From NCBI GenBank assembly GCA_037447605.1, contig CM074815.1, positions 1,364,001-1,428,000 of the forward strand: DNA of 64,000 nt, in the 5' to 3' direction. Origin of the DNA: Zygnema circumcarinatum SAG 698-1b. Lineage: Eukaryota > Plantae > Zygnematophyceae. The stretch's first letter is position 1. Each line of letters starts with the position of its first letter. A model generated the notes under the pieces. The model was not told the DNA's origin, did no database searches, and saw nothing but the letters and a program-made list of their open reading frames with translations. The position numbers and the translations under genes are program-made. Below, in pieces: positions 14,398 through 29,549 of this stretch.

Positions 14398-17300
14398 NNN
14401 NNNNNNNGTTCCAATCATCAAGTACATTAGACTCTCAATCGCGGATCTATACGGCACTCCGAACATCTTCTGTGCCTTCGCATCTGTCGAAGGTGAAATC
14501 TCCTTCGATAGCCTAGTGCCTACCTCCATGGGGCTGGAGCATGGCCTAGAATCCTCCATTCGAAAACGGGCAAGCACATCTGAAGCATACTTCTTTTGAC
14601 ATAGAAACAAGCTTCCATCCTGCCCCCTCTTCAGCTGCATTCCTAGCAGATACTGCGCCTCCCCCAAATCTGACATCTTGAAATTTGCTTGAAGCAACTC
14701 TTTCAAGGAAACGATTCTTTCAAGCGAGAGGCTCACCATTATGAGATCGTCAACATAGATCCCGACGAACATGATGTCCGCCCCCTCTCCTTGACGGTAC
14801 ACAGAATGATCTGTTTCGAATCGGTCAAATCCATTCCTTCGTAGAAGATCATCTATCTTCTCGTACCACACTCTGGGCGCCTGCTTCAAACCATATAGGC
14901 TCTTCACTAGTCGACAGACTAGGTGTTCCTTCCCTGGGGCCACCTTCCCCTCCGGCTGCTCCATGTAGATCTCTTCCGTTAGATCTCCGTACAGGAATGC
15001 CGTCTTGATGTCCAACTGATGGACATGCATTCCTTCAGCCGCTGCGATGGAAATCAAGGCTCTCAAGGAGTTGAACTTTACCACTGGAGCGAAAGTCTCC
15101 ACGTAGTCAACTCCATACTTCTGGGCGTATCCCTTCGCCACTAGCCGCGCCTTGTATCTGTCCACGCTTCCGTCTGCCTTCCTCTTGACTTTGAAGACCC
15201 ATTGCGACCAATGGCTGGCCTCCCGCCAGGGAACCCAGCTCCTCCAACCTCCGCGATGTAGTTCTCTATCAAAATTTGTCCACTTTCTTCTCGATAGCCA
15301 CCGCCATTTATGCGCCATCGACTCCGTGCGTGTGCTTCTGAGATGCATTGGTTCCGTGATCATAAAGCAATGGGCAACTCCCACGAGGTCAGCTGAATCT
15401 GAAGGCACTCTTTCTTGGATGAGGTTGTTCTCAGGCGAGTACCGATCTGGTCGCCTCCTGTCCCGACTGCTCTTCCGAATCTCCTTCGCGCTTCGTCCTC
15501 TCGGATAGAAGTAGAGTCCGGGTACAAAACCTGGAGGCATGTTAGCTAACATAGCCTCTCTCTCGGCCGCTTCAAGGTCCTCTAACTCTTGCGTGTGCAG
15601 CGGCACCGTCTCCACGGAGTTCTCCTCTTCCTCACTCAACTGAGTGTGCACTGGAATCGTCTCCGTCGAATTCTGCGGCTCCTCCGCATGCGCCTCCTCT
15701 GGCGACTCTCCAACATCAGCAGGCTCGCTTGACGCAGCTGCTGGCTCGGCTCCTTCACTCTGTGATGTGCTGGCATCCTGCACAGTGACATCACGCTCTC
15801 CACTCGTCTCTCCCTCCTCATACACGATCTCAAAATCCGCTTTTGGCTGGAGGAGATCGAGAGTCTACAACAGCTCCTTGACACTTCCCTCATCAGCTCT
15901 TAATGTTACCGTGCTCGGGACCTCCTAGCGGTCGAGGGTTCCACTACCTATACGTCGCATTTGTTGGTATTTTATAGCGAAACATAACCCTCCACGCTTT
16001 CGGGGGTCAAACTTCTTCTACGTCGCGCCTTGGGCAGTCGCATTTAACATCAGCGCCAAAGGTCCTCGGTGGGAAAGCGTAGGGCTTCCTCCCCTCCACA
16101 TACGCTTTCGGGGACCTGGTGCTTCGAGCAGAAGGCGGACATGTTTCTAATAATGCGCCCGATTAGAAACCGCTTCTCCCCAAAAAGAAGCTGGAAAGGG
16201 GGAATCAATCAACATGGTCCGAGCCATGTCCCCCAATGTCCGATTCACTCGCTCAGCTGCTCCATTGCTCTGAGGGGAATAGGGGGCAGAGAATTCATGC
16301 CTTATACCGCGGTTCTTCAGGAACTCTGCGAACTCCTTCGATTTGAATTCGCCGCCATTATGCGGCGCAAAGCCTTCAACTACAATCTGATTCTGTCTCC
16401 TTCCAGTTCGACCAATCTGGCTCTCGAAAGCCTCGACTTGTTCTTGAGGGCGTAATCAAATCTTCCTAAAATGTCATTTGAGCGTGTGAAAATGCTTACG
16501 TGCTCCACCGTTGGTCGCCGGTGTAATTGGGCCACACAAGTCAGAATGTACCAATTCCAACTTCTCTCGCGCTCGATAGGACTCGTCTCCACTCCTCACG
16601 AATGGTCTCCTGTGCGCCTTGCCCTCCACACACTCCTGGCACAACCCAAGCTCCTTCTCCACTACACCCGGGTCTAGCCCACGGACTAACCCCTTCGCAG
16701 CCAACTGCTGCATTCCTCTATGGTGTAAGTGACCAAGTCTTCTATGCCATACATCTACGGCATTCTCTGAGATTGCATTGGCATGCTCATAATTCTCCCT
16801 CTTATAATCAAGATAATACAGCCCTCCTCTCTCATAACCCCTAAACAGCTGTCTCCCAGTTTCTGTATGGATGGCCACGCATGACTTCTCCTCAAACAGA
16901 ACACTGTATCCTTTCTTACACACTTGGCTAACAGACATGAAATTCTGCCTTTAGCTCAGGGGTGTGAAGAACGTCACCAATTGACAACTTCTCTTGTATG
17001 TCTTCTTCATTGATGACCGAGCCGTCTCCGAGTATCATCCTCACGGCTCCACCTCTCGTCACGGTGACTCCTTCACCGGTTGCTGAATGGACTGAGCGTG
17101 TCTTCTCCAAGTCGTCGAGCTTGGAGAACATCGATGTGTCTCCGCACATATGCGTAGAAGCGCCGGAATCAATCAGCCACGGCCGCTTCGGATCCTCTAC
17201 CTGAATCCTTCCCACAAACGCATTCTCAGTATTCTCCGCCAGCATGAGGTTGTTCTCAACTGCTACCTTGCAGTCTGAACTCCTGTGGCCTCTCTTCTTG

Positions 17301-17908
17301 CATTTGAAGCAAGTGCCACTGAACGCCTTCTTCTCCTTCTTGCTGGATGAAGTCGCGTTTCCTCCCTTCTCTTGGCTGCCTCTGTTCTTGAAGCAATCGC
17401 TGGAGTAGTGGCCGATCTTGCCACACGTATAACACGTAATCGCCGAGCGTTCTCCTCGGGCTGACTTTGGGGCGCCTCCTCTTCGATTCGGTCGAGTGTG
17501 CAACGCAAGCACTTTCTCCTCAGGGCTGCCGACATCCTGAATGGAGTCCTCCTCCTTTATCCTACGCTTGACTTGCTCAAGAGTCATCGTGGTATTAGTC
17601 AGGACTGTCCTCAAAGCCGCCACTGCCACATCGAATCTACTGGTCAAACCCCCTAGAAACTGGCTTATCTTATGGTCTGCCTCTAATGGTTTCCCAAGGG
17701 CTATGAACCTCTCCATCAGAGCATCAAACCTGACCATATAAGCTTCTAGTTTCTCATCTGAAGTCATCTTCATCTTGCCTAGCTGCGTGTAAAGACTGAC
17801 GATCGTCACATTGTCTTTTACATCATACATTTCCTCTAGGCATCTCCACATGGCATGAGAGGTCTTCAGATCATAAAGCATAGAGGACGGACTTCCTCNN
17901 NNNNNNNN

Positions 17909-19206
17909 CTTCGTACAGGGGTCACATGGGAGTTGCCAGAACTCGTGAGGCACTGCTCCGAGAGTTCTGGTGGCCTGGACTCTCGAGGGACGTGAAAGCG
18001 TATGTACTCGCTTGTCCAACTTGTCAACGAAACAAACCCCGCACTGGCAAGATCCCTGGCCAGCTGCATCCCCTCACACCTCCTTTTCGGAAATGGGATA
18101 GTGTGGGTATGGACCTGATCACAGATCTTCCTGTGACCCCTCGGGGGCATGACTCCATCCTCGTCTTTGTCGATCGGCTCAGCAAGATGGTGCATTTTGC
18201 ACCAACTACTAAGACCGCTGGGGCCGACGAGATTGCACGGTTGTATGTTGACAAAGTGTGGAGCCAGCATGGTCTTCAGTCAGAAATTGTGTCTGACCGT
18301 GATCCACGATTCACCGGCCATTTTTGGACGGAAGTGCTCAAAATCGTTGGGACCAAGCAGGCGTTGAGTACAGCTTTCCACCCGCAAACCGATGGCCAGA
18401 CGGAACGGGTGAACAGGATCCTGGAGGATTACCTCCGGCATTATGTGGGACCTACCCCGGATGGGTGGGACGAACTGCTCCCAGTGGCTGAGTATGCCAT
18501 CAATAATGCTTACCAGGAGTCCATTGGTACCACCCCTTTCTTCTTGAACTTTGGCCAGCATCCTCTAAATCCCCTGCAACCAAGGGATCAGCCCCCTGAT
18601 CCGTGGAACATGGGCGTCCACAGAACCCCCGATCCTTGGAAGCTGAGAGGGACTGATGGGACTCAACCTCCCGCAGTCAGATCTTTTGTCCGGCTAATGT
18701 CTGAGGCGCTGCAGAGGGCACGGCAGACCCTGCTAGCGGCCCAGTCGCGACAAAAGGCCTATGCTGACCGTCACCGTACCCAACTCACCTTCAACGAAGG
18801 CGATGAGGTGTTGCTAAGTACGGCGAACTTGAGACTCAAAGCTTATGGCGGAACACGTAAGCTGTGGCCCCGTTTCATCGGACCTTTTAAGGTCGTGAAG
18901 CGAATCAATGAGGTCGCTTACCGGTTGGATTTACCAGCTCACATGAAGGTGCATCCGGTCTTTCACGTGGGATTGCTAAAGGTCTACCGTAGCGATGGGA
19001 GGATCCAGCCACCTCCCCCACCAGTGGAACTTGAAGGTGAACTTGAGTATGAGGTTGAAACCATTCAAGCCCACCGTCTTGTGAGAAAGGGTCGATCTTC
19101 CCGTCACGAATACCTCGTGAAGTGGTTGGGCTATGGGGTTGAACATAGCACATGGGAAGCCGAGGGCAACTTAACCAATTGCCAGGAGCTCATCAACTTG
19201 TACTAG
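17909..19206 (+). CDS. pol: Gypsy integrase plus chromodomain (family C)
   Basis: WWPGL...CPTCQ zinc finger, MDLITDLP, IVSDRDPRFT, AFHPQTDGQTERVNR, GPFKV, chromodomain YLVKWLGYGVEHSTWE. Confidence 0.95.
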
Positions 19207-20063: not shown

Positions 20064-21234
20064 NNNNNNNNNNNNNNNNNNNNNNNNNNNNNNNNNNNNN
20101 NNNNNNNNNNNNNNNNNNNNNNNNNNNNNNNNNNNNNNNNNNNNNNNNNNNNNNNNNCTGGAACTGAAGAGGAAGAAGAGAAGAACAAGACAACAAACCA
20201 CACAGCAAATACAAATACTATGCCCAGCGCTAAAAGACAAACTAGCATCACTGACATCCCATCTACTTCTAACTGTTATGCAATCTTGAGTCTTAGTAGG
20301 GACAGTCTCTGATTGGCCAACTGCCCACTGAGAGGCCTGACTGACTACGTGGAGACTTCTGATAGGTCAACAAACGACAATCGGCGGCATTATGCGGCGC
20401 TTCCGAGTGCGCCTTGCTGGATGGTGTGCCGTTCCGTGGGCCGCCAACGCATGGCGCCGCCTTCTCTCAATCTCCGTTGGCAGCTCCTGGATTCCGCTGA
20501 TCCGTGACACGGAAGAGGCATATGTCAAGTACAATTGAACTGATGCAGATCCGTCGAACGCAGCTCCGTGACGCTACATCCCCCTGTAGTACGAATAGTA
20601 TGAATAGTACGAATATACGAATAGTACGGCTAACACGAAGTTACCGTACAAAAAAGTGGTTTCGGCAAAATTGGTGCGAATTTATTGGTGACGCACTTTT
20701 GGAGGTGGAAAATATGATGGGGTCCTACTGTACAGTACACCTACACCGTACGGTTTATCCGTATTGATCATCCGTACGATTTGTCATTCAAAAAGTGGCG
20801 CAGAACCGTCTTGGCAGGTCTCCCTGCCGCCGGTCTGCTTGGTCCGAGCAAGGCAGGGCAGGGCAGGGCTGCGGCTGCCCCTCCTGCCTCCCTCCGCAGC
20901 CTTGCAGGAGTCCTGAATGTGACCAGGACGATGGAATGGTGCAGAGATTGTGGAGGCAGGTCAGGCTGTTTTTGCAGCTATTGCATGCGTCAATAAGCAG
21001 GGGTGCGCGCCTACTTGTTGGGGCTACAAATCCGTGCAGGAATGGCTGGCTGGTTAAGGCAGGAGAAGAAGGCGAGTGCTCAAGAGATGAGGGCTTCGTC
21101 CTGCAGCTGCAGCTTTACTCGCGCAGGATTTTAGGAGGCCATAGGTTTGAAAGGCTCGTTCATGGCGGTGGTTTCAACAATTTGGACGCATAGCATGACG
21201 AGCTGAGTGATTCTGATTGAGCAACGGGCACAAG

Positions 21235-24200
21235 ATGCCGGTGCCGGAGAGCCACGTGTCATCAGCTGAGGCCCTTGCCGGCGGCCCTTCTTCTCGGGCC
21301 CGAGCTCTCAGCCGCCATGACCGAGTGGCAGTATCAAACCTTCAACACGGCGCTTCCTTTGGAGCTGCTCCTCGTCAGCCAGCTGGCGCTCGGCAAAGCC
21401 AAACCGCCCTCCATCTGAACAAGAATAGGGTTTGGGCTCGTTGGTGGAACCGCCTAGTGCTGGGGCTGCTGCTGCTCCAATTGCCCCTCTTGGGCCTTTA
21501 CTTCTTGGGATCGCTTCCAGGCTTAGACGAAAGGATTAGTGGAAGATTGGCATACGTGACTCTTCTTTGTGACGAGAGCATGCTGGAGCCTTGCGCTGTG
21601 ATGGTACATTCTCTCCGACACAGCGGCACTATGAAAGACATTGTAGTGCTCGCAGGCAATGTTTCAGAAACAGCGCGTCGCACCTTGACCGTCCTTGGAG
21701 CTCAGGTGCAGGCAGTAAGCCTCCCTGTGCAATACTCTCCCCCGTCCGAGTTTAACGATGAAGAATTTGAGTACAGAGGCTGCCGATATGCAAAGCTGCT
21801 GCTTTGGAACCTGACAGCGTATGACAAGATTCTCTACCTCGACAGCGACATGCTCGTGCTGCGCCCTCTTGACCAGCTCTTCCAGCGCCCGGCCTTGGCG
21901 GCTGCGCCTAAGAGTATGCCTCCCGATCGCTTCAATAGTGGACTCATGCTGCTGCAGCCAAGTCAGAGCGTGTTTCTTGATATGATGACGCGCCTGAACA
22001 AAACGGCTGTTTCGGAGTTGGGGGATGAAGGTGAGCAAGGACCTTTTCCCATTTTATTCTGCACTCAATTAACCTGCTCGGGGGTTAAGCCCATTCCTGG
22101 GCTAAACACCGTTTGAACATCAAGGCTGCAGAGAACAGTGGATGGCAGCTCATCCGTTTTGCCTCGCTTCACAGATAGGACCTCAGACCATGTGAATATG
22201 AATTATCATCATCACCATCATCATGTAATGCTTGGACACAAGTGGGTGGCAAGTTGAACTCAAATGCAGATGGAATAAGAGGACGCAAGCAGAGCTGTCT
22301 CAATGTTATTAGGTTGCCGCTATTTCTAAAAATAAATAAATAACGGAAATAGTTCAATGCAGCAGTTTTCTTGCTGGAAGCCGACGGAAGCTAAAGTTTA
22401 ATAAAGGGGATGAGAGGGACGACCCTTACCATTTAGGAGAGAGCAGTTTGAGGGTCAAACAACTTCTCCGCCGTACACATTCAGGCCTCAACTTATGATG
22501 CAAGTGCTTGACGATTGCAGCTGAAAGTCATTTGGTGGGTAAATGGGTTTCAATTAAAAGAACATTATCCAATCTGGTCAGCTTTTTATTTACTCTAAAT
22601 GCAAGCAGCTTAACCGATTCTGCCTGCTTTTTCGAAAGGATTCTAGAGGGTTCTTGTGGTAGGCAAAGTCAAACTGGATGGCCGCTGAAAAGGTGCTTCA
22701 AGCGAGCAGGTGATCTGGATGCTTAGTGCATAAGTAGCGCAAAACAAGGTGGTGCAATGCACGATGTGCCGAGTCTGAGAGGCAGTTTTGAGGAGGTCGC
22801 AAGGTTTGCGGTCTGTTGGCTAGACAATCTTAGAGAGAGGTTGCTGGGAGGCCAAAAGGAGGAGGAGCATATGCTAAAGGATGAGCTATAAATCAGAGGT
22901 AACAAACTGTTAGTGGGAAACTGTCGTTAAACGTGGAGTATAAAGTTTATGTCCTTTATTTGGTTGCCCAATTGTGTAGGTGCAGAAATCCGGAGCATCT
23001 TTTGCAACTTACAGTTTCTGAAGCTTACAGAGCCTTTCTAGCAACTATAGAAGTGAGGGCGAGGAAATAATGAAAGCTTTACTTTGCAGAGAAATTCTAC
23101 AGGTCACAGTCTTAAAAATCTTGCATGAGGTAGTGTGGACATTGTAAGGGTGCCCACATTGTTAAGAACCTTGGCGCTGAAGTGTTGACACATGGAGACA
23201 TGTGTAAGGTCGGGTCGGATGTGGGAGAGGCCAGGGGGCGGTAGGCATGTTAACCGTAACAACATCGAGCTGACTGACTGATTGTCGGGAAAAGTGGTAT
23301 GGTGAGGATATTGCATTTTTCAGGTTCTGTCTTATAACAACGTGCAATCCAACGTGCATTTCCTTACCCAGCAAGTTGTTCATGAGGATAAAAGGTTGTA
23401 TAACATAGAATCTAGCTTTTGGAAACACTTTCTGTTTCATGAAGTCAACTTTAATGAGTCTATTATGGCCAAATGGACTGCACTCCGAGCAGCAATTGTG
23501 AGCATAACATATTCTGGAGTAATTTGGGCAGTCTCTACGTCGAACTCGAGGTTAGAGCGACACTGCAATGTCGGTTATGATCTTTAGGAGGGTCTGACAG
23601 ACTAACGCATTTCTTCACTCTCATCATTGTTATGCCGTGTGGATGGAGATTCCGGTGCGTGAAGGGGCTCTGAGAGGAGGTTTGAAGGACTGTGCAGGGT
23701 TCCTCAATGAGTACTTTAGCGAATGGTATCGGCAGGGGCCCGAGCACCACCTGGGGTATGGCTACAACGCGCATGTCCACATGGCGGCAGAGAGGTCGTG
23801 GCGGCCGTGGGTGGGCCCCCAACTCCATGTGCTACACTTCTCCGGAGCAGCAAAACCGTGGAACATGCGCATGGAAGCAGGCCGCCCTGCTGAACGCAAG
23901 TTCGATCGCTTTTGGTGGGCGGCGCTGTACTCCATGCATGAGACTTTGGCCAGGCAGGTGGGTTCAAAGACCCCTCTGTTAAACTGTACATTGCATTGCC
24001 ATTGTTCAATGCATGTGCATGCCATGGGTTATCGGGTCTTAAGGCCCTTTGCGATTGTAAGCTTTCCTAGCGTGGGTGGGCCTAAGGCTTTCAATCTTGA
24101 GCTTGGCAAAGTGTGCAGGGGCGTTCCACAGTGCAGCTGAGCCCTCAGTGCCGCAGCGATTTCATGGCGTATGGCCGCACATCCGATAAAACAATAGTGA

Positions 24201-25245
24201 AGAAGGAGAAGCTGAGTGTTCTACTGATGGCATTGGAGGAGAAGCCGGAGCTGGTGGGGTACTTGGTGAGGCAATACGTTGCGATGCGAATGGTGCATGC
24301 AGTCTATGTCATCCTCAGCAGTGCGCAAGGCGGCAAACAGGTGGGCTCAACCCTGTCTTAGAGCGTTCAGGACTCCATAGCAGTTCAGTGAAGGATGGTT
24401 CAACGGCGTGATGAGGACTAGTTTCTTTCTGCCTGCTCAAAGAGAATCAAAAAGCGTTTGAGCGTCCGATCGGTAACTGCATTTGTAGCTATCAAAAGTA
24501 GCGAGAGGAAGAAGAAGAGAAGAGAAGGAGAGAAGAAGTCCCTGCGAGTCGAGCTTGTTGAGAGCTTGCCCAGCCGAGACAATTTATCCCTCATTGTTTT
24601 GTAGATGCAGGCTAGTTAAATGACCAGGGGAACAAGGCAGGGTGCTGCAGGTGCAACTCGATTTTGGGCAAGATGGTGCCTCTATGCAGAAGACGGTGGA
24701 GGTAATCCGCGCCGCCCAGGGGAGCCCCAGTGAATTTTGGAAGCCCCTCAGGTAGTCTATTGTCCAGTAGGACCTTGCTCCTTCACAGTTCTGAGATGAG
24801 CAATTTTGCCTGTCCTAGGCGAGTACGCAAACAAGCTTGAACCCAACGTTACGTCGAATAGAACTTGAAGTTGAATTCGAAGCTGAAACGGATGTCACAT
24901 CATGCAGCTCTCTCGTTATGTCTTTGTGGCGCACTGAGGTTGGGGCAGGTCTCTGGAAACAGAGGCGGTGCTGGTGTGCAGTCCCACTGTGGAGGTGGCA
25001 GAGGCTGTGTTGGAAGTGGCCCTCCGCCGATGGAGAGATGGGCCCTTCCGCCTCGTGGGCTTCTTTCCTCGAGCACACTATCGCAGTGAGGGGGAGGAGG
25101 GAAGAGAGGCTTTGGTATACGTCAAAAGACCTCGCGTGGAGTATTCTATGGTGCTCTGCCGCATGGCTCTAATGCACGCCGACTACTTGCGAGCGTTTGC
25201 CTGCCAGACCCCTCCAGTTGGGACTCTCTCTCTCTCTCCCTCCCT

Positions 25246-25292
<47 letters not shown>

Positions 25293-28196
25293 NNNNNNNN
25301 NNCTCTCTCTCTCTCTCTCTCTTTCTCTCTCTATCTCTCTCTCTCGCTCTCTCCCTCTCTCTCTCTCTCTCTCCCTCTCTCTCTCTCTCGCTCCTTATGC
25401 TGCGTCTTTTCTTTATGATTACCTCTGGTGTAGTGTCACATTCTGCCTGTATCCCGAGCCTGTGCGTGCTTGTTTAGTTCCTCGTGGGCTGTGAAAGGAG
25501 TCATGAGCAGTCTTCATTTCTGCAGCTGAGTCGCTCCCTAAGAGAACTGCAGGGTCTCCTTGAGGCGGTGGATCGAAGCCCAGAATGCATGGATGTGGCC
25601 CTCAACTTCATGGTCTCTCACCTCTCCGGACTACCCCCACTGCTTGTGTTGGACCCCAGCAAGAGGGCCTTTGATTCTCCCATGGAAGCTGCAAGAGAAG
25701 CGAATGGATCCCGCTGTTTGGCAGCCATGGAGTCCTTTTGGGGATACACTCCCATAAAAAACACAAGTGAAGCCGTGGGAGTGTTCCTCAGCAGCCATTC
25801 GGTGCGCAGCAAATTGGAGGGTGCACGGGCACGTTCAATGGCTCTGCAGACTGACTGGGCGCCCATCTTTGATTTCAGCGGGAATGTATCTCGCCACATT
25901 GACGAGAATCTCAAGTTCATGCCTCTGGTCAGTGAAGGGACAAGTTCAAACCACTTTTTAGATAGGAATCTGTGTAAATGGTGCAGCTCTTTTTCTTAGC
26001 CAAGTCGCTTCAGGCATCTTCAATGTCTGCTTCCTTTCCTCCGTTATCGTGCAAAAAACCACCAGTATCTTCAGTTCGATTCTATTCCTCATTGCATTTG
26101 CGAAGATGTGCTTAAGGCGTTGCAGGCCGCATCCTTATCGACTCTATCCCTCACAGCAGTTCCTCGTTTTCCTGTCCCCTCTCTTCTCGCTTTGCCTTCT
26201 TCTTCTTCTTTGTCGTTTCCATTCTTTCCGTTTCCCCTTCACCTCCAACTCCTCCCTTCCCCCATTCTGCATGATTCTCGCCCCCCATTCTCAAATCATT
26301 TACATGAAATGTGGGCTGCTGTACAGGTCGAGATATCGCTGCATTCTCCGGAGCTATCTCTAGTCCCCTCTGAAGCCGCCTCTGGGATGGCTCTGCTTTG
26401 TATTTGTGGCAATGACACAAGCAAAGACGTTGATTCTCGAAATCTCTATGCCTTAGTCTCCACCGAAAGCGTTCCACCCAACGCCCTGCGCCTCCCCGGA
26501 ACAACCTTCGTCGCCATGTCACGTCACGGATTCGCCGACCGTCCTCTACAGCTGCGAGTGCTTCTAGGAAACTTCTTCCACTTCTGCGAGGACTATAAGG
26601 GCAGCTGCTTTCCCCCCAACCGTTTGCTTCTCTTCCGCAGAGGGGGGCTTGTCCCCACTCTGACGAAGGTCAGTTTGGGTTCTGCACAGGCCCTTTTGGG
26701 GCCCTCCATTCAGCCCATGAAGATGCCGGATGCCTCTACTCCCGTCTGCTTTGATCGCGCTGTAGTGGTTCGCCGAAATCGAGGAGAGCTTGCAGACCGA
26801 CCAGGCCTCCTTGCTCGCATGAGACGACACGTGTGGAGTTTCTGTGCGGGAGGGAAACTGCCCGCAGTGACACGTGTCACTGTCCTAGGGGATGAGCGAA
26901 CAGGGGGGCGAGGGCGGCTGCTGAATGCGGTGGAATTGGCGACGGAACTAAGGAATGTTTGTGGGACAAAGTGCCGGCCTCATAGGACAGCGCTCACAAT
27001 GAATGGAAGCTTCTGTCATCTGGTGGGCTGCCTTACGTTTCGGCAAGCCTTTTTCCTGCTTTAGCGTATGTGGGGGTTTGTTTCACCAGCATGTAGGAAG
27101 CTGTGAGGTTTTGAAGATGTCTATCAGAGCTTTTTCGTGCTTATCTAATCGCTTGCAATTGCACTGCAGTAGCCTTTTGCGTCTTCCAGACTTCCAACCT
27201 AGTTTCTTTTCCATTTTTCGTTCTCCACTCTGTGACATGCTGGCTAAATCTAATCCCACTCCCCCTTTTATTTCTTCATCTTCACCTCTCGATCAAAATT
27301 CCCTTCTTCTTGCCTCTCACTCTCTCCCGCTTGAAGGTATCAAATCAGAGCCCCTGCATGGCTGTTCTGTGCAGGTACGCTCTGTGAAGACGGCTGCCAT
27401 AGTGGTTGCTGCGCACGGCGAGGCCCTCGCCAGCAGCAGTCTCTTTATGACACCTGGCACACTGGTATTGGAGCTTGCTGCACCCTTGGACGGAGCCCCC
27501 AGTGAAGCTGCAATCTTAAAGGACTGTATGGTGGAGAAAGATGCTGCCGCCCTGGGGCTCCGTTGGATGCGCATGGTGATGCCGCCTGAGCTGCCTCGGC
27601 CAGAGAGAGGCTCTCGCTATGAAGTCCGGGCCAGCCTGTCTGCTGTGGGGCAGGCGGTTCTGGAGGAGCTGAAGACTCATGGTGGGATAATGAACCGTTC
27701 AAAGGATGGCTTGCATGTGGATCATTCTGCGGCTCTTGAAGAGAGGCCTCAGAATGAGAGTAGTACTGTGCAGAATCTGAGTCTGGCGGAGGACATACAT
27801 GCGGAATCGGATGTTGGAAAGGGGTGGAGGGATGGAGGAGGAGGAAGGGAAGAGAAGGGAGAGCTTCACCGTGGAGAGGGGACAGAAGTGGCGTTGGTAT
27901 CTGGGCAGGGCTGGCGCAGGAGTCTAAAGGCTGTCAACGCGCAAGACGACCGACGGGGGGCTTCCAAGGGAGGAGGGCGGAATGTGGGGCCGGCTCACGA
28001 AGACAACGAGCAGGTACATAGATTTGGAGGAGTTGGTGCTTTTAGAACTGCAGAGGGAGGAGCAGGTTGGAGCAAAGTAAACAATAGAAGTGAAGGTGGC
28101 AGAGGAGACTCGAATAGAGCCTCGTCGGGTAGACGGAAGTCGAAAGTTTTTGGAAGCAGGATACGGTTACGGAGACATATGCACACGGAGCACTAG
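21235..28196 (+). CDS. Putative type II membrane multi-domain glycosyltransferase: GT8 + GT64 (exostosin C/EPC1-like) + GT61 (DUF563)
   Basis: Predicted exons 21235-22030, 23698-23957, 24137-24340, 24651-24751, 24949-25216, 25526-25927, 26327-~27000, ~27375-28196. The first six junctions are GT-AG and phase-compatible. TM segment LVLGLLLLQLPLLGLYFL. GT8: YLDSDMLV, FNSGLM, GDEGFLNEYF, HFSGAAKPW. GT64: RLVGFFPRAH, YSMVL, CMDVALNFMV. GT61: R.LLNA.EL, IVVAAHGEAL...FMTPGTLVLE. Confidence 0.7.
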
Positions 28197-29549
28197 AATG
28201 TAGTCTTTTTTCTTCATGTAAATGTTCTTTTTTTAATGTATGTGATTTCCCTTAAAGAGTCTGTAAACTTTGTACTTTGGATGCCCTCTACAATTACAAT
28301 GCTCCTGTCCGTTTCTTGCCATGTCGTCTGTTCCATTACATAGTTTTGATACAACTTTCACAGCCTTCCTCTTTTCTGCCCTCCAGAAGGAAGTTTCACT
28401 CAGCATAGTTTGACGCCTTCGAAATCAGAGCAAGCTTTCCCGCAAAATTAGTTATAGCGCCTTTCAAAACAAATTCCAGTTACGAGCCATACTGAGTCAT
28501 ACAAGGAAAACCTTGGTCTAGATTTGGCAGCGCTTCCATGGAATAAAAAACCAGGAAAGGACAAACAGGTAAAAAACCAGTCACCTTCCAAGGATCTGTT
28601 ACCCATTGCAAGCCAGCCAGGCAAAATGGATAAAAGGGAAGCCATGACCATGCTGCCATAGCTTGTGTACCCATGGCTTCATACAAGTCCATGCCCACGA
28701 CTTCATGCATGCCATGGCATGACTTCATGTACAGTACGCCATGCTTCAGACATGCCTGCTTGGCATGCGTGACAGCACAAGGCGTTCACCTCCTGCAGGG
28801 ATTTCCAGGAGGAAGCCATTCGCACTGCCACCCTTTTTGAGGGGTGCAGAACTATGGCAGACGCAGTAATAACCATAGAAACCCTAATCGAGCAGCAGAA
28901 CGCCTGTCCAAAGCATGACAGTAAAGCGACCCGCATAGGGAACAAATCGAAAAGGAAGTACAGCAGGAGAGCCATGGGCCAGTGGAAGAGAAATGGAAAC
29001 CCTGAGAAACACCTGTGAAACGCATGTGGTGCCCGAAGCCACGTTATTCATTACGTACATTAGATCCTTGCAACAAATGCCAAATGCGCGGCAGCCTTGG
29101 CATCCAGAGGGGAGACCGCTCACCAAGGGGCACAAGCACCTGAGAGCACTTCTGGTCTCGTCCAGGTTTCAAACAGAGCCGCTAGCCTGCCTATCATGGC
29201 TGGTTGGCTGGCTAACCAAGCCAAGACTCGGTTACTATGGCCGAGCAGCGAATCTGAATCGAATCTTCTTGAAGTAGCCGAGAGAGTTTTCTAGAATCCT
29301 CAGCACAGACCGCATGACCAAACCTTGGAAATCACCAATTCTAAATTATGAGTCAGAGCCTGAACAGGGAGAGGCCCCCGTTTTAATTATGAGTAACCCT
29401 TTCTGAGCTCACAGACAGCTGCTGGCGTACTATCACTGATCAATAAGACATAGTAAAATGGGATCAATTTGGTCCATAAATGGGAACATGTACCAAATGA
29501 AGCTTTGTTTGGTGGACATCCTCGCTAGCTTGCTGAGGGCCGTCAAGAG

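What the first reader, a model, noticed from the sequence alone, without database searches (positions are those of the whole stretch)
21235..28196. Putative GT8-GT64-GT61 triple glycosyltransferase fusion
One TM-anchored reading path links a GT8 domain, a GT64 domain and a GT61 domain through six phase-compatible GT-AG junctions. The 25216 donor is weak and the last junction (~27000-27375) is unresolved. Established: in Arabidopsis the GT8 protein IPUT1/PGSIP6 adds GlcA to inositol-phosphoceramide, GT64 proteins GMT1/EPC1 and GINT1 add the next sugar of GIPC sphingolipids, and GT61 proteins add Ara/Xyl side chains to xylan; these are separate genes. Inference: a Rosetta-stone fusion forming a single-chain glycan assembly line, possibly for GIPC head groups or an algal wall polymer.
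Basis: partly seen in the sequence, partly recalled or inferred. Interest (0 to 1): 0.75.

Follow-up and report, generated by a model that had tools for sequence, protein, structure and literature searches.

The report
Expressed three-module glycosyltransferase fusion gene
This alga makes one spliced mRNA for a membrane-anchored protein that strings together three sugar-transferase modules (GT8, GT64, GT61), but the middle module has lost its sugar-donor-binding motifs, so it is more likely a two-activity enzyme with a scaffold than a three-step assembly line.

Summary
Window 21235-28196 (+) is one 8-exon gene with a 3540-nt CDS (1179 aa). RNA contigs from 4 runs in 2 studies match the window exactly. 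They confirm four GT..AG junctions as internal joints, including the GT8-to-GT64 link. A fifth junction, at the weak 25216 donor, joins to 25553 and is confirmed by contigs that run on into exon 6. The assembly gap (25293-25302) lies in a (CT)n repeat inside intron 5 and is spliced out. The last two junctions (25927|26327, 27022|27375) rest on exact abutment in relatives' transcripts, not on this organism's RNA.

All three family calls are supported. GT8 and GT64 are hit by Pfam. GT61 rests on the closest orthologue's Pfam hit, a profile-profile match (99.95%), and a predicted fold that matches only POMGNT2.

The same architecture occurs in Mesotaenium, Closterium and unnamed algal transcriptomes, in three paralogue clades with complementary motif loss. 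In this gene's clade GT8 and GT61 keep their motifs. GT64 has lost DXD (now SPT), LNxRF, VWGN and NCED.

The GIPC reading is not supported. GT8-GT64 fusions also occur in Mucorales, which lack inositol sphingolipids.

The scan had already noted a paralogous triple fusion elsewhere in this genome. No paper describing the architecture was found.

The parts
21235..22030 (+). Exon 1. It holds the ATG (an in-frame TGA lies at 21214-21216), a cytosolic tail, the single TM segment (aa 74-92, nt 21454-21510), and the N part of the glycogenin-like GT8 module with DSD (21841-21849) and NSG (21934-21942).
   Evidence: Pfam PF01501 scores 34.7 bits against a cutoff of 24.3. Glycogenin-1 matches at E 2.5e-16 with DSD aligned to its DAD. 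RNA contig X5 record 15 runs 20900-22028 and then splices.
23698..23957 (+). Exon 2. C part of the GT8 module, with HFSGAAKPW (23835-23861).
   Evidence: RNA joints 22030|23698 (X2, X5) and 23957|24119 (X1, X3, X5). PF01501 profile positions 214-250. Motif table.
24119..24340 (+). Exon 3. Linker and start of the GT64-like module. The VWGN motif is replaced by VILSS (24308-24322).
   Evidence: RNA joints. Collinear with L001, L002 and L003. Motif table.
24651..24751 (+). Exon 4. GT64-like module, with LNxRF replaced by PSEFW (24726-24740). A minor alternative donor at 24701 shifts the frame and gives a stop at 25087.
   Evidence: Joints 24340|24651 and 24751|24949 (X1, X5). Alternative joint 24701|24949 in X2 only. 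Its consequence was computed. Motifs.
24949..25216 (+). Exon 5. Core of the GT64-like module. The DXD position reads CSPT (24977-24988).
   Evidence: PF09258 scores 56.9 bits at profile positions 74-154. In the alignment to EXT1, LDED lies opposite VCSPT. Family motif table. Donor 25216 is used in X1 and X5.
25224..25393 (.). (CT)n microsatellite holding the assembly gap (N at 25293-25302). It lies wholly inside intron 5 (25217-25552).
   Evidence: RNA contigs skip it. There are no missing residues relative to the Pfam profile or to orthologous transcripts.
25553..25927 (+). Exon 6. C part of the GT64-like module (ECMDVALN at 25583-25606) and the linker. The true acceptor is 25552|25553, not 25525|25526.
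   Evidence: The loose-end consensus at 25217 equals window 25553 onward in X1 and X5. PF09258 profile positions 158-237. L001 abuts at 1156|1157.
26327..27022 (+). Exon 7. N half of the GT61-like module (NFFHF at 26570-26584, RGRLLN at 26909-26926).
   Evidence: phmmer finds fused orthologues and standalone GT61 proteins. Tree. hhalign probability 99.95%. The junctions are inferred from L001 (1507|1511 and 2206|2207), not from this organism's RNA.
27375..28196 (+). Exon 8. C half of the GT61-like module (HGEAL at 27414-27428), followed by a poorly conserved G/R/E-rich tail of about 165 aa and the TAG stop.
   Evidence: Atlas: 27 of 30 hits are GT61 clusters. Orthologue P0001 hits PF04577 at 32.3 bits against a cutoff of 27 over the equivalent region. 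The predicted fold of that orthologue matches POMGNT2 only.

Best explanation
Shown: the locus is one expressed 8-exon gene for a 1179-aa protein with a single N-terminal membrane anchor, which reads as a type II, Golgi-type protein. The protein carries three glycosyltransferase-derived modules in the order GT8 (glycogenin-like), GT64-like, GT61-like. It belongs to a family of such fusions found in zygnematophyte algae. Shown at motif level: the GT8 module keeps DSD, NSG and HFSGxxKPW. The GT61 module keeps NFxH, RxxxN and HGxxL. The GT64 module keeps its fold signature but has lost every donor- or metal-binding motif examined. Inferred: the protein works as a two-activity enzyme. GT8 is a retaining family and would add an alpha-linked sugar. 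GT61 is an inverting family and would add a second sugar to the same glycan. This follows the logic of LARGE (GT8+GT49). The dead GT64 module would serve as spacer, acceptor-binding surface or oligomerisation surface. The paralogue clades have complementary losses, so hetero-oligomers of the EXT1/EXT2 type are plausible. The substrate is unknown. A secreted or wall polysaccharide or glycoprotein glycan is more likely than GIPC.
For: Gene model and phases. Own-organism RNA joints for four introns, and the exon 5 to exon 6 junction shown by contigs that run on. Relatives' transcripts are collinear with all 8 exons, with abutting junctions. Family calls: Pfam GT8 and GT64; glycogenin at E 2.5e-16; EXT1 and EXTL2. 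GT61: P0001 and P0044 score above the Pfam cutoff; the fusion-only profile hits POMGNT2 at 1e-4 and EOGT at 4e-3; hhalign gives 99.95%, E 5e-38, against standalone GT61 proteins; the predicted fold matches only POMGNT2, E 7.5e-11 over about 285 columns. Motif states across 21 family members. Clade structure, with the window plus P0001 plus Mesotaenium P0002 grouped at 94/91. The GT64 exon 5 is as conserved between the window and P0001 (72%) as the other modules (61-78%), so the module is retained and not decaying.
Against: No enzymatic data exist for any member. Motif loss does not prove inactivity. The Q of the GT8 D-Q-G motif is E here. The GT61 calls rest on orthologues and profiles, because the window's own exons 7 and 8 gave no Pfam hit at E<=1 when scanned separately. 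The exon 6-7 and 7-8 junctions are not confirmed in this organism's RNA. A follow-up on a paralogue elsewhere in this genome read that protein as a non-catalytic helper.
Confidence: 0.6

Rival explanations
1. One reading: three active transferases in one chain build GIPC head groups. GT8 would act as IPUT1 and GT64 as GMT1 or GINT1, with GT61 adding a further sugar.
For: The order GT8 then GT64 is conserved.
Against: The GT64 DXD, LNxRF, VWGN and NCED motifs are lost in this gene and its clade. GT8-GT64 fusions occur in Mucorales, which lack inositol sphingolipids (PMC4174763). The closest solved GT8 relatives are glycogenin and Skp1 Gat1. IPUT1 orthology was not tested.
Confidence: 0.07
2. 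All three modules are active on some non-GIPC glycan, with the GT64 module using a non-canonical, DXD-independent donor site.
For: The GT64 module is well conserved between the window and P0001 (72% in exon 5). It still scores 56.9 bits against PF09258.
Against: Four separate motifs are changed. Sister clades and outgroups keep them.
Confidence: 0.1
3. The whole protein is a non-catalytic helper or regulatory subunit of a complex formed with paralogues.
For: Complementary motif erosion among the paralogue clades. An earlier scan note reads a paralogue in this genome this way (unchecked here).
Against: In this clade the GT8 DSD, NSG and HxxGxxKPW motifs and the GT61 HG motif are intact.
Confidence: 0.15
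4. Two or three adjacent genes, or a mis-join across the assembly gap, are being read as one gene.
For: A gap with an estimated length lies inside the model. The donor at 25216 is weak.
Against: Spliced RNA contigs link exons 1-3, exons 2-5, and exon 5 to exon 6 across the gap. Single transcripts or ORFs in relatives cover all modules. The downstream modules have no start codon with a TM or signal segment.
Confidence: 0.02

Closest known systems
Mesotaenium endlicherianum ME000090S10179 (P0002, 1041 aa) and the transcript-derived protein P0001 (Logan SRR8128907)
   Same: Same GT8-GT64-GT61 order and same clade (94/91 support). Same loss of the GT64 DXD, and the same retention of the GT8 and GT61 motifs.
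   Different: Only 41% (P0002) and 62% (P0001) identity in exon 7. Both are unnamed predicted proteins with no known function.
LARGE1/LARGE2 (GT8 + GT49 bifunctional matriglycan polymerase)
   Same: A type II membrane protein with an N-terminal GT8 retaining module and a second, inverting module in one chain (established knowledge). This is the working analogy for clade A.
   Different: The second active module here is GT61, not GT49. A GT64-derived module is inserted between the two. No polymerase activity has been shown.
EXT1/EXT2/EXTL3 (GT47 + GT64) and EXTL2 (GT64)
   Same: The GT64 fold signature aligns to EXT1, EXTL2 and EXTL3. They are multi-module transferases that work as heteromers (established knowledge).
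   Different: The window's module lacks the DXD that lies opposite LDED of EXT1. It has no GT47 module.
Two-module GT8-GT64 proteins of Galdieria sulphuraria (named 'EXTL3 isoform 2' by its source), Mucorales fungi and Closterium
   Same: Same GT8-then-GT64 backbone.
   Different: They have no GT61 module. Most keep DDD, LNNRF and NCEDIAMN in the GT64 module.
GT61: POMGNT2 and EOGT (solved structures), and uncharacterised standalone land-plant GT61-domain proteins (Riccia, Selaginella, Diphasiastrum, Psilotum, Cryptomeria)
   Same: Homologous over about 290 columns. The predicted fold matches POMGNT2. The HG..L motif is kept.
   Different: Here the module is fused, not standalone. The fused modules form their own clade (100/100). 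Its relation to the xylan XAT/XYXT clade was not tested.
Arabidopsis IPUT1 (GT8), GMT1/GINT1 (GT64)
   Same: Same CAZy families and the same order of action as the module order.
   Different: They are separate genes. The GT64 module here lacks the donor motifs. Orthology was not tested.

Membership tests
GT8 (PF01501, glycogenin-like) | Profile match above the curated cutoff | tested here: met
   Exon 1 scores 34.7 bits against a cutoff of 24.3. Exon 2 covers profile positions 214-250. Glycogenin-1 matches at E 2.5e-16.
GT8 (PF01501, glycogenin-like) | DXD metal site, NSG, and HxxGxxKPW | tested here: met
   DSD is aligned to DAD of glycogenin. NSG and HFSGAAKPW are present.
GT8 (PF01501, glycogenin-like) | D-Q-G motif before LN | tested here: inconclusive
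   The window reads GDEG where most members read GDQG, and the motif spans the exon 1/2 junction.
GT64 (PF09258) | Profile match above the curated cutoff | tested here: met
   Exon 5 scores 56.9 bits and exon 6 scores 29.1 bits against a cutoff of 21.3. The profile positions are contiguous.
GT64 (PF09258) | DXD donor/metal motif | tested here: not met
   CSPT lies opposite LDED of EXT1 and opposite DDD of P0041, P0042 and P0053.
GT64 (PF09258) | LNxRF, VWGN and NCEDIAMN motifs | tested here: not met
   They read PSEFW, VILSS and ECMDVALN. Only the D of CED is kept.
GT61 (PF04577) | Profile match of the window's own exons | tested here: not met
   Exons 7 and 8, scanned separately, gave no hit at E<=1. 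The domain is split by intron 7, and the joined product was not scanned.
GT61 (PF04577) | Homology of the module to GT61 proteins | tested here: met
   P0001 (62-65% identical to exons 7-8) scores 32.3 bits against a cutoff of 27. P0044 scores 29.4. hhalign gives 99.95%. POMGNT2 and EOGT are hit by the fusion-only profile.
GT61 (PF04577) | GT61 catalytic-domain fold | tested here: met
   The model of P0001:235-560 (pLDDT 73.7) matches only POMGNT2 chains, at E 7.5e-11 to 1e-7. This is a proxy, not the window's own chain.
GIPC pathway enzymes (IPUT1; GMT1/GINT1) | Orthology by domain phylogeny | not tested
Indirect evidence against it is the GT8-GT64 backbone in Mucorales, which lack GIPC.
Bifunctional two-module transferases (LARGE-like) | Two catalytically competent modules of opposite stereochemistry in one chain | tested here: inconclusive
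   The motifs are intact in the GT8 and GT61 modules. There is no activity test.

The most novel reading that the evidence does not exclude
Zygnematophyte algae carry an ancient family of GT8-GT64-GT61 fusions. Its paralogue clades have each disabled a different module: GT64 in clade A, GT8 in clade B, GT61 in clade C. The clades would then assemble into an EXT1/EXT2-like hetero-oligomeric synthase that builds a lineage-specific extracellular glycan. The standalone land-plant GT61-like proteins would be what is left of the same machine after fission.
Probability: 0.2. Interest if true: 0.75.

Novelty: new variant of a known kind. Interest (0 to 1): 0.55.

Why it matters
Multi-module glycosyltransferases such as LARGE and the exostosins build repeating or multi-step glycans of major biological importance. 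A conserved three-module chain in the closest algal relatives of land plants, with paralogues that decay in complementary modules, is a natural experiment. It shows how such enzymes subfunctionalise and how pseudo-transferase modules are kept. It also points to an unknown glycan made by these algae. It links an uncharacterised GT61-like clade of non-flowering land plants to a defined partner set (GT8 and GT64), which gives testable hypotheses about what that clade does.

Tried and rejected
The word search with exon 7 found nothing in the 128-406 aa range. Pfam found nothing on exons 3, 4, 7 and 8 scanned alone. PDB phmmer with exon 8 gave only chance hits. The word search with P0001 returned only P0041.

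Literature searches found no description of this architecture. They covered GT8/GT64/GT61 with 'fusion' or 'bifunctional', the Pfam accessions, the run accessions, and Zygnematophyceae, Mesotaenium and Closterium with the GT families.

Rejected readings:
- Separate genes.
- The gap breaks the frame.
- Exon 6 starts at 25526; RNA and orthologues both show 25553.
Full report
**Observation**

Translating the three + frames of 21000-28400 gives a chain of open stretches. Canonical splice sites join them into eight exons:
- 21235-22030
- 23698-23957
- 24119-24340
- 24651-24751
- 24949-25216
- 25553-25927
- 26327-27022
- 27375-28196

All seven introns are GT..AG, and six of the seven acceptors read GCAG|G. 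The phases fit, and the CDS is 3540 nt (1179 aa plus stop). An in-frame TGA lies 18 nt upstream of the ATG. Only one segment is strongly hydrophobic (aa 74-92, Kyte-Doolittle 2.17). That fits a type II membrane anchor.

Every search on the window was exon by exon by reference, and database orthologues served as full-length proxies.

**The gap**

The N run at 25293-25302 lies in a (CT)84 microsatellite, 25224-25393, between exons 5 and 6. Three independent lines show it is intronic and harmless:
- Pfam GT64 profile positions 74-154 (exon 5) continue at 158-237 (exon 6).
- In a relative's transcript contig (L001) the exon 5 and exon 6 equivalents abut at 1156|1157, with exon 6 starting at the residue encoded from 25553.
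- RNA contigs of this organism end their match at 25217 and run on with GTCTCCTTGAGG..., which is window 25553 onward (X1 and X5).

So the weak donor CCA|GTTGGG is real, and the acceptor is 25552|25553.

**Expression**

Four Logan contig sets from two studies match the window with zero differences and are spliced, so they are RNA. The joints seen are:
- 22030|23698 (X2, X5)
- 23957|24119 (X1, X3, X5), the GT8-to-GT64 link
- 24340|24651 (X1, X2, X5)
- 24751|24949 (X1, X5)

One contig covers exons 1-3 and another covers exons 2-5. Two contigs, 1644 and 2148 nt long, start in exon 5 and extend 1.5-2.0 kb beyond it. X2 also shows an alternative donor at 24701. It shifts the frame to a stop at 25087.

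**Family assignments**

GT8:
- PF01501 scores above its cutoff on exon 1, and the profile's end is covered by exon 2.
- Glycogenin-1 matches at E 2.5e-16, with DSD opposite its DAD.

GT64:
- PF09258 scores 56.9 bits on exon 5 and 29.1 bits on exon 6.
- EXT1, EXTL2 and EXTL3 are hit by phmmer.

GT61:
- Exons 7 and 8 alone gave no Pfam hit. Exon 8 alone gave no meaningful PDB hit.
- phmmer of exon 7 against 1.84 billion representatives found 37 proteins.
- The best were long fusions: P0001 with GT64+GT61; P0002 with GT8+GT64+GT61; and P0003 with GT64+GT61 by Pfam, its N-terminal part aligning to exon 1 by tblastn.
- Further down came standalone land-plant proteins carrying PF04577 at 1e-13 to 1e-15.
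- A profile of the fusion C-modules alone matches the standalone set at 99.95% (E 5e-38, 289 columns).
- In the PDB that profile hits only POMGNT2 and EOGT.
- An AlphaFold model of P0001:235-560 (pLDDT 73.7) matches only POMGNT2 chains, at E 7.5e-11 to 1e-7.
- The Atlas features for exon 8 agree.

**The fusion elsewhere**

- tblastn of each exon shows all eight collinear on L001, an RNA contig at 61-78% identity. The junctions abut at 567|568, 1156|1157, 1507|1511 and 2206|2207.
- Exons 1, 2, 3, 5, 6 and 7 are collinear within the single 1008-aa ORF of L002 and L003.
- Further triple fusions are Mesotaenium ME000090S10179 and ME000214S03274, Closterium NIES-68 and Naga37s-1, and a EukProt transcriptome ORF.
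- Two-module GT8-GT64 proteins occur in Closterium, Galdieria and Mucorales. A reverse-order GT64-GT8 form also exists.
- A tree of the exon 7 region puts all fused modules in one clade (100/100), separate from the standalone land-plant proteins. Three subclades each contain several genera, and the window groups with P0001 and Mesotaenium P0002 (94/91).

**Motif states**

| Clade | Members | GT8 | GT64 | GT61 |
|---|---|---|---|---|
| A | window, P0001, P0002 | intact (DSD, NSG, HFSGxxKPW); not seen in P0001, whose ORF starts within the GT64 module | DDD changed to SPT or RAS, LNxRF to PSEFW, VWGN to ILSS, NCED to ECMD | keeps NFFHF, RGRLLN, HGEAL |
| B | P0003, P0050, P0044 | eroded | keeps DD | not retained (HG is AG/SG) |
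| C | P0041, P0042 | intact | intact | degenerate |

In clade A the GT64 exon 5 is still 72% identical between the window and P0001. No other exon except exon 2 is better conserved, so the module is kept under constraint.

**Mechanism**

The following is inference. The protein is a Golgi-type enzyme with two working sites, a retaining GT8 site and an inverting GT61 site, acting on one glycan as LARGE does. The GT64 relic serves as scaffold, binding surface or oligomerisation surface. The complementary decay among paralogues suggests heteromers.

The GIPC reading is disfavoured for two reasons. The GT64 site is gone here. The GT8-GT64 backbone also exists in Mucorales, which are reported to lack inositol sphingolipids (PMC4174763).

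**Novelty**

I found no paper on this architecture. The proteins do exist as unnamed models in public proteomes. The scan had already noted a paralogous triple fusion and a GT64-GT8-GT8 fusion on other pieces of this genome.

**Surroundings**

LTR-retrotransposon fragments lie upstream at 16931-19203. No neighbouring glycosyltransferase gene was seen among the ORFs of 120 aa or more between 16000 and 34000 that were scanned.

Noticed in passing
window 24701 / 24949: A minor alternative donor inside exon 4 (GAG|GTAATC) is used in run X2. It shifts the frame and gives a stop at 25087, so the product would be truncated after GT8 or the mRNA would be an NMD target.
   Followed up: partly
window 20832-21234: RNA contigs extend upstream of 20900, so the 5' UTR is at least about 400 nt. 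It holds 8 upstream ATGs (20917-21195), which may mean uORF control, or an overlapping upstream transcript.
   Followed up: no
window 22496-23398 and 24329-24677: Low-depth RNA contigs lie inside intron 1 and across intron 3 in X3 and X5. They are either unspliced pre-mRNA or intron retention.
   Followed up: no
window 16931-19203: Retrotransposon fragments lie just upstream: a copia-type gag with zinc knuckles on the - strand, and a chromovirus-type integrase with SH3 and chromodomain on the + strand.
   Followed up: partly
L001:640-715: The relative's transcript contig shifts reading frame by one base within the exon 3 equivalent, which splits its ORF into 281-aa and 737-aa pieces. This is either an assembly error or a real frameshift.
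   Followed up: no
P0054 (Mesotaenium ME000292S04847), P0056: A reverse-order architecture: GT64 (aa ~85-330), then GT8 (~420-590), then about 450 further residues. It matches an earlier scan note on a GT64-GT8-GT8 gene in this genome.
   Followed up: partly
P0008, P0009, P0013, P0016, P0019, P0022: The nearest standalone relatives of the fused GT61 module are uncharacterised GT61-domain proteins of liverworts, lycophytes, a fern and a conifer. No angiosperm protein appeared among the 37 hits.
   Followed up: partly
P0046 (Closterium sp. Naga37s-1, 1119 aa): A GT8 module is annotated in one protein together with a kinase domain and EF-hands. This is probably a merged gene model.
   Followed up: no
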